Part shown: positions 33,978 to 38,334 of the stretch, piece after piece
Numbering within the stretch: position 1 is the first letter of the stretch
Layout of the letters: the number at the start of each line of letters is the position of its first letter
Source: Rebecca billardiae RCC1528
Lineage: Eukaryota > Protista > Haptophyta
Reading direction: 5' to 3'
Length of the DNA stretch: 64,000 nt
NCBI GenBank assembly: GCA_965240325.2
Contig: OZ251230.1
Coordinates: forward strand, 1,922,001 to 1,986,000
Program-made: the position numbers and the translations under genes
Notes under the pieces: generated by a model
Told to the model about the DNA's origin: nothing
What the model saw: the letters and a program-made list of their open reading frames with translations, nothing else
The model's database searches: none

Positions 33978-35723
33978 CTACACCGCCACCGCGACAGCCC
34001 TCCCATCGGCGGCCTCGATCGCCGGCGCGGCCGCCGCCAACCCCGCCACCCCGTCCGCGGCACCGTCGGCCGGCGCGGCCCGCAGCGGCGCGGCCGCGCC
34101 CGCCGCCTCGTCGCCGCGCCCGCCACCGCCGCCCGCGTCCGCGTCCGCGTCCGCATCCGCGTCCAAGCCGGCTGCGGCGGCGGGCGCTGGCTGGATGAGT
34201 GTGAGGCAGGGGCCGCACTGCAGCCCGCTCGCGTCGTCGCGGCAGAAGGCCACGATGGCGCCGGAGAGGAAGCAGAAGCACGTCGACGCCCACATGCACG
34301 CCGCGAAGCCCTTGGCCCGGTCCTCCGCCACGTACGAGTAGAGCGCCCCCGAGGTGAGCGTGCCCACCAGTCGGCCGATGGCGTTGGCCATGTAGTAGAA
34401 CCCGACGTTGGTCGCGACCTGGGGGAGCGGAGGGGGAGGGGGAGGGCGAGGGAAGGGGGGGCACGGGCGGCGTGCGGGCCGCGCGGCGTGAGACGCGTCG
34501 GCGCGCGCGGGCGGTCAGCGCCCCCTGCCCGGCGCGCGCGCGACCACCCGCGCCGCGCGCCGCCGCGCGCCGCGCGCGTGCCGCCGCGCCGCTGGGCGCA
34601 CCTTGTCGCCCTCGGCGTAGCGCACGACCAAGTACGAGTGGACCGACGAGTTGACGGCGAAGATGATGGCGAAGGAGGCGATGCCGCCGATGAGGTAGCC
34701 CAGCATGCCCGGCACGTCGCGCTCCGCGAACGCCGGCGCGTGGCTCGCCGCCGCGCCCAGCAGCGCGGTGATGGGGATGAGCGCTAGCGCCCACAGCACC
34801 GCGGCGTGCTTGTTGGGCGGCGCCTGCCGGAGCGGCCCGCTGACGAGCTGCGGCGTGTACGCCTGCATCTGGCCGTACACGATGATGTAGAGCGCGAGGA
34901 ACGCGCCCACCACCTCGCGCGGCAGCCCGAGCCCGTACGTCTCGTCGCGCAGGAAGTACGGCAGCGGCACCTCGAACCAGAGGTCGCGGCTGCCAAACAG
35001 AAACGTGCGCGCGAGCGAGAGCGTGTTCAGGTTGTAGTTCTTGTTGAGCAGGATCTGGCGGAGGGTGGCGGGCTTCTTGGCGGCGGTGCCGAGGCGCGCG
35101 TCCAGCCCGAACACCGCCCACGGGAACGCGAGCGCCACCAGCCCGAGCATCACGCCGAGCGCGATGTAGTAGCCGAGGGCCTCGTCCGAGCCGATCAGCG
35201 CGGCGCCCAGGAAGTAGCCCACGCCCTTGAGCGCGTTCTTCCAGCCGGTGAGGAGGGCGACGAGCTTGAAGAGGCGCGACTGCTTCTCGTCGGGCGTCAC
35301 CAGCTTCGTCACCGTCTTGCCGCCCAGCTTGGTCAGGTCCTTGGCGATGCCGCAGAGCATCTGCGCGAGCGTCACAAACGCGATGGCCGTCGGCTTCTCC
35401 CACTCGTCCTGCCAGCCCATCAGCATGCCGAGGCCGCACATCTGCAGCGCGAGGCCGACGAGGAGGGTCCACCGGATCCCCCACCGATCGCCCAGCATCC
35501 CCGCCGCGATGTTCGTCACCACGCCCGCGAGCTCGTACAGCGTGAACATGACGGCGACCTCCATTGCCGTGAAGCCGCGGTTGTACGCGTGCAGCAGGAC
35601 GACCATGCGCACGCCGCCGTCGGTGACGGTGTAGAGGAGGTACGAGATCGAGATCACGATGAACGGCTTGAGCCCGCCGCCGCCCGCCCCCTGGCTCGGC
35701 GCCGCCGCGTCCTCCGTCCCCAT
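33978..35723 (-). CDS. arsJ: Organoarsenical efflux MFS transporter ArsJ (exons 35723-34602 and 34418-33978)
   Basis: Motifs recalled from ArsJ: TVTDGGVRMVVLLH, LYELAGVVTN, AQMLCGIAKDLTKLGGK, LTGWKNALKGVGYFLG, ARTFLFGSRDLWF, FAVNSSVHSYL. GT-AG intron 34601-34419 restores ...GDKVATNVGFYYMANAIGRLVGT. Confidence 0.92.
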
Positions 35724-35987
35724 CCCACGGCGCCCCGGTGCACTGGCGCTGCTGCCAAGCAGTGTGATCGTTGGGCGTATCCACGTGGCGTTTCGACGAA
35801 CATTGCGTGCTCTTCCTAGGGAGCTGACCCACTTTCCTATGGCGAGATTCGCCGTCGGCGTCTCTGGGCGAACGACTCGACAGCGAGGACGGCAAGCTTT
35901 GCCGAGACAGGCCGAGAGCCCGAGACCAGACCGGATCGTCGTTCCGCTCCCCCCGATCGCCCGGGCCGCGCGCCCACGTCCGCGACC
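35724..35987. promoter_or_regulatory. Putative 264-bp bidirectional promoter shared by arsJ and GAPDH
   Basis: Head-to-head ATGs at 35723 (-) and 35988 (+). Promoter role is inferred from geometry only. Confidence 0.6.
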
Positions 35988-37022
35988 ATGCTGGGCAAGC
36001 CCAAGGCGATCATCAACGGGTACGGCCGGATCGGCCGCCTCACGATGCGCGCGCTCTTCGACCACTCCGAGCTCAACGTCGTCGCCATCAACGAGATCGC
36101 CGCGGACGCCGCCACGGCGGCGTACCTCACCGAGTTTGACACGCACCACGGCACGTGGAAGGCGGGCAAGGTGAAGGCGGAGAAGGACGCGATCGTGATC
36201 GACGGCAAGCGCGTGCGCTTCCTGCAGGCCAAGTCGCCCGCCGACGTGCCGCTCAAGGAGCTCGGCGTCACCATCGTCATCGAGTGCACGGGCGCGCACA
36301 ACTCGGCCGCCAAGCTCGAGCCTTTCTTCGCCAACGGCGCGAAGAAGGTGGTCGTGTCGGCGCCGGTGAAGGACGAGGGCGTGCCCAACGTGGTGCTCGG
36401 CGTGAACGAGCAGACCTACGACCCGAAGAAGCACCGCATCGTCACCGCCGCCTCGTGCACCACAAACTGCATCGCGCCGGTCATCCATCTGCTCCACCGG
36501 CGCGTGGGCGTGCGCCACGGCTCGATCACGACGATCCACTGCCTCACCAACACGCAGAGCGTGCTCGACGCGCCGTGGTGCGCGGAGAAGGAGCCGCGGC
36601 GCGCGCGCGGCGCCGTCAACAACTTCTACCCCACCACCACCGGCTCCGCCAAGGCCGTGGGCGAGGTGATCCCCGAGCTGAAGGGCAAGCTGAACGGTTT
36701 TGCCGTGCGTGTGCCGCTGGCGACCGCGTCGATGACGGACATCACGCTCGAGATGGCGCGCGAGGTGACGCGCGAGGAGATCAACGAGCTGGCGAAGGCG
36801 GCGGCCGCCGCCGAGCTCAAGGGCATCCTCGGCGTCGAGGAGCGCCTGCTCACCGCCGCCGACTACTGCAACGACGCGCGCTCGACCATCATCGATGCCT
36901 CGTCCACCCTCGTGGTGGGCGGCACGCAGCTCAAGCTGTACTGCTGGTACGACAACGAGTGGGGGTACAGCAACCGGCTCGCCGAGCTCGCGCGCAAGGT
37001 GGCGAGGCTGGGCGGTGCGTAG
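35988..37022 (+). CDS. GAPDH: Glyceraldehyde-3-phosphate dehydrogenase, ArsJ-associated type, intronless, no transit peptide
   Basis: INGYGRIGR, AASCTTNC catalytic motif, WYDNEWGY. Features recalled for the ars-linked clade: INE, YDPKKHRIVTAASC, HGSITTIH.LTNTQ, PTTTGSAKA. Confidence 0.95.
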   Translation: MLGKPKAIINGYGRIGRLTMRALFDHSELNVVAINEIAADAATAAYLTEFDTHHGTWKAGKVKAEKDAIVIDGKRVRFLQAKSPADVPLKELGVTIVIECTGAHNSAAKLEPFFANGAKKVVVSAPVKDEGVPNVVLGVNEQTYDPKKHRIVTAASCTTNCIAPVIHLLHRRVGVRHGSITTIHCLTNTQSVLDAPWCAEKEPRRARGAVNNFYPTTTGSAKAVGEVIPELKGKLNGFAVRVPLATASMTDITLEMAREVTREEINELAKAAAAAELKGILGVEERLLTAADYCNDARSTIIDASSTLVVGGTQLKLYCWYDNEWGYSNRLAELARKVARLGGA

Positions 37023-37830: not shown

Positions 37831-38334
37831 CTAAGCCTTGAGGGCCGCAATGACGGCATCGGCGTACGTATCCTTCGGGCACTTCTCGCCATCCTCCTTC
37901 TCGCCCGGCATGAAGTGCGTCACCTTACCATCGCGCACGATCATTGCGTAGCGTTTCGTCCTGACAAATGTCTCCGTGCCGCTGACCTCGCCAAGCGCGC
38001 GGCAGAGCTCGCACTTGTCGTCGGACAGGACGAGGATCGAGTCGCGGGGCACGCCAAGGGACGTCGCCCAGCCATAGCACACGAACGGGTCGTTCGTGCA
38101 CGTGCAAATGACGGTGTCCACCCCGGCCGCGCGCAGCTGGTCACCCATCGTGAGGAAGGAGGGCAGGTGCGTCTTCGAGCACGTCGGCGTGAACGCCCCT
38201 GGGATGGCGAAGATGACGACGGTCTTGCCAGGCGCGCACAACGCCTTCAGAGAGTGCGGCGTCGGCGGCGCATAGTCTGGCTGGCCCTCGAGCAGGGTCA
38301 CGTCAGGCACCTCGCTGCCGATGGTTGGAGCCAT
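37831..38334 (-). CDS. PRDX5: Peroxiredoxin, Prx5 / type II
   Basis: IFAIPGAFTPTCSKTHLP, NDPFV..GW, RTKRYAMIVRDGKV. Confidence 0.93.
   Translation of the reverse strand: MAPTIGSEVPDVTLLEGQPDYAPPTPHSLKALCAPGKTVVIFAIPGAFTPTCSKTHLPSFLTMGDQLRAAGVDTVICTCTNDPFVCYGWATSLGVPRDSILVLSDDKCELCRALGEVSGTETFVRTKRYAMIVRDGKVTHFMPGEKEDGEKCPKDTYADAVIAALKA

What the first reader, a model, noticed from the sequence alone, without database searches (positions are those of the whole stretch)
33978..37022. Eukaryotic GAPDH-ArsJ arsenate-efflux module kept as a head-to-head gene pair
Seen: an ArsJ-motif MFS gene and a GAPDH start 264 bp apart in divergent orientation. arsJ carries a spliceosomal intron of the same style as neighbouring host genes, so this is not bacterial contamination. 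Established: in bacterial ars clusters (characterised in Pseudomonas aeruginosa) a dedicated GAPDH makes labile 1-arseno-3-phosphoglycerate and ArsJ exports it; the genes are co-oriented in an operon. Inference: the pair was acquired together by HGT and rewired to a bidirectional promoter, keeping co-expression of a channelled two-step detox system in an alga. Algal ArsJ homologues may already be known; the linkage with a dedicated ars-type GAPDH is the notable point.
Basis: partly seen in the sequence, partly recalled or inferred. Interest (0 to 1): 0.92.

Follow-up and report, generated by a model that had tools for sequence, protein, structure and literature searches.

The report
Haptophyte ArsJ-GAPDH arsenate export gene pair
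A haptophyte-type alga keeps the two genes that bacteria and green algae use to expel arsenate (a special GAPDH and the ArsJ pump) head to head on 264 bp of shared upstream DNA; the pair is real, but the same neighbourhood was published for green algae in 2020, so this is a new lineage, not a new system.

Summary
A two-exon ArsJ-type MFS gene (minus strand, 35723..33978, 183-nt GT-AG intron) and a single-exon GAPDH (35988..37022) start 264 bp apart in divergent orientation.

- **GAPDH type:** it passes NCBIfam's ArsJ-associated GAPDH cut-off (459.2 vs 450). It sits in a 100/99-supported ars-type clade, away from canonical GAPDHs.
- **ArsJ type:** it falls in a eukaryote-only ArsJ clade (99/98), sister to diatoms.
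- **Not contamination:** the intron lies at the same codon boundary in Pavlovales sp. CCMP2436, which also has the head-to-head pair.

The "notable point" is not new. Foflonker and Blaby-Haas (2020) described the ArsJ-GAPDH3(-PGK) neighbourhood in green algae, proposed bacterial HGT, and showed arsenate-sensitive Chlamydomonas arsJ and pgk3 mutants.

The divergent layout is not special to this alga either. I found it in diatom-clade contigs, in GC-rich PGK-bearing picoeukaryote-like contigs, and on one unassigned scaffold. None of 80 bacterial species loci has it; 76 to 78 are co-oriented GAPDH then ArsJ.

What seems new is the haptophyte case, the absence of PGK, and a haptophyte GAPDH clade separate from green/diatom GAPDH3. 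Co-expression and arsenate function remain untested because no sequencing runs were listed.

The parts
35988..37022 (+). Single-exon CDS of an ArsJ-associated (ars-type) glyceraldehyde-3-phosphate dehydrogenase, 344 aa. It has no N-terminal extension, so it is presumably cytosolic.
   Evidence: ORF. Pfam Gp_dh_N and Gp_dh_C. NCBIfam NF033735 scores 459.2 bits against a cut-off of 450. Ars-type clade supported 100/99. It carries all 8 clade-signature residues, plus catalytic Cys157 and His184.
35724..35987 (.). The 264-bp spacer between the two start codons. It must hold both 5' UTRs and the promoter(s), so it is a putative bidirectional promoter.
   Evidence: Coordinates. It has no notable repeats or foldback. 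It shares no k-mers above shuffled expectation with the Pavlovales CCMP2436 spacer. Promoter function is inferred, not shown.
34602..35723 (-). ArsJ exon 1 (374 codons), the main body of the MFS transporter.
   Evidence: NCBIfam NF033734 MFS_ArsJ scores 330.4 bits over model positions 3-339. Pfam MFS_1. It is 79% identical to Pavlovales CCMP2436 ArsJ.
34419..34601 (-). Spliceosomal intron, 183 nt, GT...AG, phase 0, 88% GC, with a C-rich tract before the acceptor.
   Evidence: Sequence. The HMM is contiguous across the junction at positions 339/340. The Pavlovales CCMP2436 orthologue has an intron at the same position.
33978..34418 (-). ArsJ exon 2 (146 aa plus stop). It holds the last transmembrane segments, the eukaryote-specific GL-x-CG-x-C motif and a low-complexity Ala/Asp/Gly tail.
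   Evidence: NF033734 scores 47.8 bits over model positions 340-388. The motif is shared with green-algal, diatom and hemichordate ArsJ and is absent from bacterial ArsJ.

Best explanation
This is a nuclear two-gene arsenate-detoxification module of a haptophyte (Pavlovales-type) alga, ultimately of bacterial origin.

Proposed mechanism:
1. The cytosolic ars-type GAPDH uses arsenate in place of phosphate on glyceraldehyde-3-phosphate and makes the labile 1-arseno-3-phosphoglycerate.
2. The ArsJ MFS permease exports that compound before it hydrolyses. The net effect is arsenate efflux at the cost of one 3-phosphoglycerate.
3. The two genes diverge from a 264-bp spacer that most likely acts as a shared bidirectional promoter.

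The head-to-head layout is an old eukaryotic arrangement. It is shared with another haptophyte, with diatom-clade contigs and with prasinophyte-like contigs. It was not invented in this genome. Unlike the green-algal version, no PGK-like gene accompanies the pair.

Shown here: gene models, family assignment, phylogenetic placement and synteny.
Inferred: enzyme chemistry, transport substrate, membrane location and co-regulation.
For: Family assignment:
- GAPDH scores 459.2 on NF033735, above the 450 cut-off. ArsJ covers NF033734 positions 3-388 contiguously across the two exons.
- The best non-haptophyte GAPDH hits are named bacterial ArsJ-associated GAPDHs at 56-58% identity. Canonical solved GAPDHs score at most 299 bits.

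Trees:
- In the GAPDH tree the ars-type clade has 100/99 support. It includes C. reinhardtii Cre07.g354200, the published GAPDH3.
- In the ArsJ tree all eukaryotes form one clade (99/98) that includes C. reinhardtii ArsJ. Haptophytes are sister to diatoms (100/100).

Published function: PMC7826186 reports that GAPDH plus ArsJ act as an arsenate efflux system in P. aeruginosa (citing Chen 2016). It also reports that C. reinhardtii arsJ and pgk3 mutants are arsenate-sensitive.

Synteny:
- Pavlovales CCMP2436 has the same divergent pair about 540 bp apart, with a shared intron position.
- Divergent pairs also occur in L095 and L109 (diatom clade), in L101 and L103-L107 (with PGK), and in L008.

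Functional coupling in bacteria:
- 76-78 of 80 species loci have GAPDH immediately upstream of ArsJ.
- One Filomicrobium MAG encodes an in-frame GAPDH-ArsJ fusion.
Against: - No expression, splicing or arsenate-response data could be obtained.
- ArsJ scored as two pieces sums to about 378 bits, under the 400 cut-off. However, the experimentally supported Chlamydomonas ArsJ scores 380 and the Pavlovales one 394.6.
- E. huxleyi and D. lutheri keep the orthologous GAPDH without ArsJ within 8 kb. No protein from either species appears among the 120 best ArsJ hits. The GAPDH may therefore have an ArsJ-independent role.
- Named diatoms (Seminavis, Cyclotella), a pedinophyte and a hemichordate have the genes unlinked. 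Linkage is therefore not essential.
- The spacer shares no detectable motif with the Pavlovales spacer.
Confidence: 0.8

Rival explanations
1. The GAPDH is mainly a metabolic (glycolytic or gluconeogenic) isoenzyme of bacterial origin, and its position next to ArsJ is a relic of the ancestral operon without present-day functional coupling. On this view ArsJ may export another phosphorylated or acyl metabolite.
For: - E. huxleyi and D. lutheri retain the orthologous GAPDH with no ArsJ within 8 kb. Neither species appears among the top 120 ArsJ hits.
- Their GAPDHs score lower on NF033735 (430.6 and 434.5) than the linked ones (459.2 and 447.1).
- The genes are unlinked in Cyclotella, Seminavis and a pedinophyte.
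Against: - The divergent pair is conserved in several independent algal lineages.
- All eight ars-clade signature residues are retained.
- Bacterial linkage is near-universal and a natural fusion exists.
- The Chlamydomonas arsJ mutant is arsenate-sensitive.
Confidence: 0.12
2. The haptophyte pair, or only its GAPDH half, comes from a separate and later bacterial transfer. It would not descend from the acquisition that gave green algae and diatoms their GAPDH3.
For: - Haptophyte GAPDHs plus scaffold L008 form their own clade (99/94), apart from the green and diatom GAPDH3 clade (99/100).
- The window GAPDH is 56-58% identical to gammaproteobacterial proteins but only about 48-50% identical to green or diatom-type GAPDH3.
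- Forcing haptophytes with diatoms, as in the ArsJ tree, costs 31.6 lnL units (AU p 0.095).
Against: - The backbone of the ars-type clade is unresolved.
- A single eukaryotic GAPDH clade is not rejected (AU p 0.366), and neither is haptophytes plus diatoms (p 0.095).
- ArsJ is clearly of the common eukaryotic type with the eukaryote-only C-terminal motif.
- The divergent layout is shared with the other algal lineages, which a fresh operon transfer would not predict.
Confidence: 0.2
3. The locus is bacterial contamination or a misassembly inside a eukaryotic scaffold.
For: Both proteins are bacterial-type, and the local GC content (0.72) is at the high end of the window.
Against: - ArsJ has a spliceosomal intron at a position shared with another haptophyte.
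- ArsJ belongs to the eukaryote-only clade and carries the eukaryote-specific motif.
- The divergent layout was never seen in 80 bacterial loci.
- Other stretches of the window reach 0.72-0.74 GC.
- Flanking genes are of eukaryotic type.
Confidence: 0.01

Closest known systems
ArsJ-GAPDH3(-PGK3/PGK4) arsenic-detoxification gene neighbourhood of green algae (Foflonker and Blaby-Haas 2020, PMC7826186)
   Same: - It pairs a eukaryotic nuclear ArsJ homologue with a bacterial-type GAPDH distinct from GapC and GapA/B, and the two genes are neighbours.
- Bacterial HGT of the pair was proposed.
- C. reinhardtii ArsJ and GAPDH3 fall in the same ArsJ clade and the same ars-type GAPDH clade as the window genes.
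- PGK-bearing metagenome contigs (L101, L103-L107) even show the same head-to-head ArsJ/GAPDH3 layout.
   Different: - The lineage is haptophyte. That paper mentions no haptophytes or diatoms.
- No PGK-like gene is present anywhere in the 64-kb window or in the Pavlovales locus.
- In Chlamydomonas incerta, ArsJ and GAPDH3 are convergent and GAPDH3 is head-to-head with PGK3.
- Haptophyte GAPDH forms a clade apart from green and diatom GAPDH3.
Bacterial ars-operon gapdh-arsJ pair (characterised in Pseudomonas aeruginosa, Chen et al. 2016, as summarised in PMC7826186)
   Same: Same two protein families. GAPDH passes the NCBIfam ArsJ-associated model, and ArsJ covers the whole ArsJ model. The presumed chemistry is the same: 1-arseno-3-phosphoglycerate is formed and then exported.
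   Different: - Bacterial genes are co-oriented, GAPDH first and usually less than 100 bp apart, in 76-78 of 80 species loci. None is divergent. Here the genes are divergent with separate transcripts.
- ArsJ here has an intron, a eukaryote-specific GL-x-CG-x-C motif and a long low-complexity tail.
- Identity to bacterial proteins is only about 37-44% for ArsJ and 46-58% for GAPDH.
Pteris vittata GAPC1-OCT4 arsenate tolerance route (Cai et al. 2019, as cited in PMC7826186)
   Same: It works the same way: a GAPDH arsenylates G3P and a transporter handles the product.
   Different: It is convergent. The fern uses a plant GapC and an OCT4 transporter, not ars-type GAPDH and ArsJ. It is not homologous to this locus.
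Lone arsJ of Cyanidiales red algae (Cho et al. 2023, PMC9812998)
   Same: A eukaryotic ArsJ reported as monophyletic with other eukaryotic ArsJ, which agrees with the single eukaryotic ArsJ clade found here.
   Different: There arsJ 'exists by itself', without GAPDH or PGK neighbours. Here it is tightly paired with GAPDH.

Membership tests
ArsJ-associated GAPDH (NCBIfam NF033735) | Whole-protein HMM score at or above the curated cut-off (450 bits) | tested here: met
   The window GAPDH scores 459.2 bits over model positions 3-323 of 323. For comparison, C. reinhardtii GAPDH3 scores 458.7, Cyclotella 481.5, Pavlovales 447.1, D. lutheri 434.5 and E. huxleyi 430.6.
ArsJ-associated GAPDH (NCBIfam NF033735) | Phylogenetic placement with ArsJ-linked GAPDHs rather than canonical GapC, GapA or Gap1 | tested here: met
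   The ars-type clade has 100/99 support against 12 canonical representatives. A quick tree with 64 other representatives gave 100 SH-aLRT. Solved canonical GAPDHs score at most 299 bits, against about 400 for named bacterial ars-type proteins.
ArsJ-associated GAPDH (NCBIfam NF033735) | Gene adjacent to an arsJ gene | tested here: met
   The start codons are 264 bp apart in divergent orientation.
ArsJ-associated GAPDH (NCBIfam NF033735) | Intact phosphorylating-GAPDH catalytic residues and clade-specific residues | tested here: met
   The SCTTNC motif with Cys157 and His184 is present. All 8 positions that are at least 90% conserved in the ars clade and at most 10% in the outgroup are matched. 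These include T189, where canonical GAPDH has D in the T-x-D-Q motif, and S220, where canonical has A in TGAAKAV.
ArsJ-associated GAPDH (NCBIfam NF033735) | Forms 1-arseno-3-phosphoglycerate and confers As(V) resistance together with ArsJ | not testable with these tools
   This needs enzyme assays or complementation. The function is known only for P. aeruginosa, as summarised in PMC7826186.
ArsJ organoarsenical efflux MFS permease (NCBIfam NF033734) | Whole-protein HMM score at or above the curated cut-off (400 bits) | tested here: inconclusive
   The spliced protein could only be scored as two exons, 330.4 plus 47.8 bits. Full-length eukaryotic orthologues also fall just short: Pavlovales 394.6, C. 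reinhardtii 380.0 (the mutant is arsenate-sensitive) and Seminavis 349.7. The cut-off is tuned for bacterial proteins.
ArsJ organoarsenical efflux MFS permease (NCBIfam NF033734) | End-to-end match to the ArsJ model and an MFS fold | tested here: met
   Model positions 3-339 (exon 1) and 340-388 (exon 2) of 392 are covered. It is the only NCBIfam hit. Pfam MFS_1 is present.
ArsJ organoarsenical efflux MFS permease (NCBIfam NF033734) | Orthology with experimentally supported ArsJ | tested here: met
   It lies in the eukaryotic ArsJ clade (99/98) together with C. reinhardtii ArsJ. That clade is separated by a single branch from all 32 bacterial operon-encoded ArsJ sampled.
ArsJ organoarsenical efflux MFS permease (NCBIfam NF033734) | Transports 1-arseno-3-phosphoglycerate out of the cytosol | not testable with these tools
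   This requires vesicle transport or resistance assays.
Eukaryotic ArsJ-GAPDH3-PGK neighbourhood (Foflonker and Blaby-Haas 2020) | ArsJ and ars-type GAPDH as neighbouring nuclear genes | tested here: met
   Shown, and conserved in Pavlovales CCMP2436.
Eukaryotic ArsJ-GAPDH3-PGK neighbourhood (Foflonker and Blaby-Haas 2020) | A non-canonical PGK-like gene (PGK3/PGK4) in the neighbourhood (in most but not all green algae) | tested here: not met
   Three searches found no PGK in the 64-kb window: signature motifs, exon peptides of the C. incerta PGK3 locus, and two PGK4-like proteins from L100 and L107. The only hit from the last search was an antisense artefact of an over-extended ORF. No gene with a PGK Pfam domain is called in the Pavlovales locus.
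Eukaryotic ArsJ-GAPDH3-PGK neighbourhood (Foflonker and Blaby-Haas 2020) | GAPDH belongs to the same subclade as green-algal GAPDH3 | tested here: inconclusive
   Haptophyte GAPDH plus L008 (99/94) and green plus diatom GAPDH3 (99/100) are separate clades on an unresolved backbone. Joining all eukaryotes is not rejected (AU p 0.366).

The most novel reading that the evidence does not exclude
The divergent ArsJ/GAPDH pair may be an ancient two-gene cassette that has been kept, or passed between, haptophytes, diatoms and prasinophytes as a unit. In the haptophyte line the GAPDH half may have been replaced in place by a second, independently acquired bacterial ars-type GAPDH. That would be partner swapping inside a conserved bidirectional gene pair.

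This would explain two observations:
- Haptophyte ArsJ is sister to diatom ArsJ.
- Haptophyte GAPDH sits apart from the green and diatom GAPDH3 clade and is more similar to gammaproteobacterial enzymes.
Probability: 0.2. Interest if true: 0.55.

Novelty: new member of a known kind. Interest (0 to 1): 0.3.

Why it matters
Arsenate enters cells through phosphate transporters, so phytoplankton living in phosphate-poor water need a way to get rid of it. The result extends the GAPDH-ArsJ efflux route beyond bacteria and green algae. It now includes haptophytes and, from the metagenome contigs, diatom-clade algae.

The result also shows that the head-to-head layout is conserved across distant algal groups. 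That gives a clean, compact pair with a 264-bp spacer and almost no introns. The pair could be used to test two things: whether a bacterial operon was converted into a bidirectional eukaryotic promoter unit, and whether the algal pair needs a PGK partner at all.

It is useful for annotation. These GAPDHs should not be counted as glycolytic isoenzymes, and the MFS gene should be named ArsJ. The finding is not a new kind of system.

Tried and rejected
- **RNA and DNA read support.** Two look-ups listed no runs, so read laying was never used. Splicing and expression remain unverified.
- **PGK partner.** A motif scan, C. incerta PGK3 exon peptides and two PGK4-like proteins found nothing in the window. 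The single hit was an antisense artefact of an over-extended ORF.
- **Promoter features.** No foldback or significant repeat lies in the 264-bp spacer. The spacer shares fewer k-mers with the Pavlovales spacer than shuffled controls do.
- **Discordance between the ArsJ and GAPDH trees.** It is suggestive but not significant (AU p 0.366 and 0.095), so I do not claim separate origins.
- **Bacterial contamination.** Rejected on the conserved intron, the eukaryote-only clade and motif, and the layout.
- **Chen et al. 2016.** The primary paper (PMC4992400) is not held. The mechanism is cited through PMC7826186.
- **Literature for haptophyte or diatom ArsJ-GAPDH.** Searches returned only the green-algal and red-algal papers.
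- **Organism identity.** I did not determine it independently. The 'haptophyte/Pavlovales-type' label rests on the two gene trees and on other agents' notes.
- **Whole spliced ArsJ against NCBIfam.** The spliced protein has no reference, so it was scored as two exons only.
Full report
**What is there**

The GAPDH ORF at 35988..37022 (+) encodes 344 aa with both GAPDH Pfam domains.

On the minus strand an MFS gene starts at 35723. Its structure is as follows:
- Exon 1 runs to 34602 (374 codons).
- A 183-nt GT...AG intron (34601..34419, 88% GC, C-rich acceptor tract) follows.
- Exon 2 (34418..33978) adds 146 residues.
- The spliced product is 520 aa.

The splice site is not guesswork. Exon 1 matches positions 3-339 of the NCBIfam ArsJ model and exon 2 matches positions 340-388. 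The Pavlovales sp. CCMP2436 orthologue has an annotated intron at the same phase-0 boundary, between GDK and VAT.

The two ATGs are separated by exactly 264 bp (35724..35987). No public sequencing run could be listed for this DNA, so transcription and splicing are unverified.

**What the proteins are**

The GAPDH passes the curated cut-off of NCBIfam NF033735, "ArsJ-associated GAPDH" (459.2 vs 450).
- Its best database hits are haptophyte proteins: Diacronema lutheri 73%, Pavlovales CCMP2436 72% and Emiliania huxleyi 72%.
- After those come more than a hundred bacterial proteins at 54-58% identity. Most of those that carry a source name are called ArsJ-associated GAPDH.
- Every solved canonical GAPDH, including plant GapC and GapA/B, scores 260-299 bits. 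The bacterial ars-type proteins score about 400.
- In a maximum-likelihood tree the ars-type enzymes form a 100/99 clade against canonical representatives.
- That clade contains the window protein and C. reinhardtii Cre07.g354200, the published GAPDH3.
- The window protein keeps the catalytic Cys and His. It also matches all eight residues that distinguish the ars clade from the outgroup.
- Two of these are a D-to-T change in the T-x-D-Q motif and an A-to-S change in TGAAKAV.
- From my memory of GAPDH structures, not tested here, these two motifs line the phosphate sites.

ArsJ hits only the ArsJ NCBIfam model.
- Scored in two pieces it sums to about 378 bits, below the 400-bit cut-off.
- The Chlamydomonas ArsJ, whose mutant is arsenate-sensitive, scores 380. 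The Pavlovales orthologue scores 394.6. The shortfall is therefore a property of all eukaryotic ArsJ.
- In the ArsJ tree all eukaryotic sequences form one clade (99/98), separated from all 32 sampled bacterial ArsJ. The eukaryotes sampled were green algae, diatoms, haptophytes and a hemichordate.
- Haptophytes are sister to diatoms (100/100).
- Eukaryotic ArsJ also share a C-terminal GL-x-CG-x-C motif that bacteria lack.

**Not contamination**

Four lines of evidence exclude a bacterial contaminant:
- The intron position is conserved with another haptophyte.
- ArsJ belongs to the eukaryote-only clade and carries the eukaryote-only motif.
- The flanking genes are of eukaryotic type, for example an Aa_trans transporter whose nearest Atlas clusters are 100% eukaryotic.
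- Other parts of the window have equally high GC.

**Prior art**

Foflonker and Blaby-Haas (Mol Biol Evol 2020, PMC7826186) reported the following:
- They described a conserved green-algal neighbourhood of ArsJ, a bacterial-type GAPDH3 and a PGK-like gene.
- They proposed that GAPDH and ArsJ were acquired as a unit from bacteria.
- They showed that C. reinhardtii arsJ and pgk3 insertion mutants are arsenate-sensitive.

Cho et al. (2023, PMC9812998) noted a lone arsJ in Cyanidiales and a monophyletic eukaryotic ArsJ.

The 2020 paper does not mention haptophytes, diatoms or gene orientation. Further searches found no paper on ArsJ in haptophytes.

**Synteny survey**

| Source | Arrangement |
|---|---|
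| Pavlovales sp. CCMP2436 | ArsJ and GAPDH head to head, about 540 bp apart |
| D. lutheri, E. huxleyi | Orthologous GAPDH, no ArsJ within 8 kb; neither species among the 120 best ArsJ hits |
| C. incerta | ArsJ and GAPDH3 convergent; GAPDH3 head to head with PGK3 |
| Seminavis, Cyclotella, a pedinophyte, the hemichordate Glandiceps | Genes unlinked |
| L095, L109 (GC 40-43%, nested in the diatom ArsJ clade) | Divergent ArsJ/GAPDH3 pair |
| L101, L103-L107 (GC 64-68%) | PGK, then GAPDH3, head to head with ArsJ |
| L096, L098-L100, L117 | GAPDH3, then PGK, head to head with ArsJ |
| L008 (unassigned scaffold) | Divergent pair, next to a Na/Pi cotransporter |
| 80 bacterial species loci | 76-78 with GAPDH directly upstream of ArsJ on the same strand; none divergent |
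| Filomicrobium MAG (L026) | In-frame GAPDH-ArsJ fusion |

The metagenome rows come from a scan with the window's ArsJ that returned 38 eukaryote-type loci. The second and third contig groups fit the Mamiellophyceae-type clusters of the 2020 paper; this match is an inference.

The head-to-head layout is therefore a recurrent and probably old eukaryotic arrangement. It was not invented in this alga.

**Origin**

ArsJ points to one eukaryotic origin. GAPDH resolves into two eukaryotic clades on an unresolved backbone:
- haptophytes plus L008 (99/94);
- green algae plus diatoms (99/100).

Forcing all eukaryotes together is not rejected (AU p 0.366). Forcing haptophytes with diatoms, as in the ArsJ tree, costs 31.6 lnL units (p 0.095).

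Co-acquisition once, early in algal evolution, fits the data. A separate origin of the haptophyte GAPDH cannot be excluded.

**Mechanism**

By homology, the cytosolic GAPDH has no targeting extension. It would arsenylate glyceraldehyde-3-phosphate, and ArsJ would export the labile 1-arseno-3-phosphoglycerate.

The 264-bp spacer must carry both promoters and is probably bidirectional. It contains no notable repeat and shares no motif with the Pavlovales spacer.

No PGK-like gene lies in the 64-kb window, so the haptophyte module has two genes.

The retention of the GAPDH alone in E. huxleyi and D. lutheri is the main caveat. It hints at a role beyond ArsJ coupling.

**Verdict**

The module is real and correctly recognised. 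It is bacterial-derived and eukaryotised, and it is a new lineage member of a published kind of algal gene neighbourhood. Interest is modest.

The most useful new points are these:
- the haptophyte and diatom-clade occurrences;
- the cross-lineage conservation of the divergent layout;
- the lack of PGK;
- the separate haptophyte GAPDH clade.

Noticed in passing
L026:2900-5257 (+) (MAG Filomicrobium sp. MED665, NZGY01000106.1): A single 785-aa ORF encodes GAPDH (aa 2-347) fused in frame to ArsJ (aa 368-761). This natural fusion supports direct coupling of the two activities.
   Followed up: partly
L007:10001-11635 (+) (Glandiceps talaboti chromosome OZ203272.1): A hemichordate chromosome of 27.5 Mb carries an intronless eukaryote-type ArsJ (544 aa) with no called neighbours within 10 kb. 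It nests inside the eukaryotic ArsJ clade. I did not examine whether it is a true animal gene or a symbiont or contaminant.
   Followed up: partly
L101, L103-L107 and L096, L098-L100, L117 (metagenome contigs): There are two arrangements of a three-gene PGK / GAPDH3 / ArsJ cluster in intron-poor picoeukaryote-like contigs. In one, GAPDH3 is head to head with ArsJ. In the other, PGK is head to head with ArsJ. ArsJ is always one partner of a divergent pair.
   Followed up: partly
L008:428-7557 (ENA metagenome scaffold, GC 62%): An unassigned scaffold has a divergent pair 328 bp apart: a long ArsJ-like gene (627 aa) and an ars-type GAPDH (376 aa). A Na/Pi cotransporter gene lies nearby. Its GAPDH is sister to the haptophyte clade (99/94), and its ArsJ sits on a very long branch.
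   Followed up: partly
L009:351-4014 and L010:433-3964 (marine metagenome contigs, GC 33%): A low-GC marine bacterial operon has an arsR-like HTH_5 gene (divergent), then GAPDH, then ArsJ 5 bp later. It is followed by a PstS-like PBP_like_2 gene, linking arsenate efflux with phosphate uptake genes. The GAPDH cluster has more than 1000 members in marine metagenomes.
   Followed up: no
P0241 and P0251 (representative-library hits): One protein of 2089 aa has five GAPDH-like stretches, and one of 1455 aa has two. Both score high against the window GAPDH. Their origin and meaning are unknown.
   Followed up: no
window 37831-38334 (-): A 167-aa Redoxin/AhpC-TSA (peroxiredoxin-like) ORF lies about 800 bp downstream of the GAPDH stop, convergent with it. 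A link with arsenic stress is possible but untested.
   Followed up: no
L001 and L003 (Diacronema lutheri, Emiliania huxleyi): Both haptophytes keep the orthologous ars-type GAPDH without ArsJ within 8 kb. Their GAPDHs score below the NF033735 cut-off (434.5 and 430.6), whereas the ArsJ-linked ones score 459.2 and 447.1. This may reflect relaxed constraint or a changed role.
   Followed up: partly
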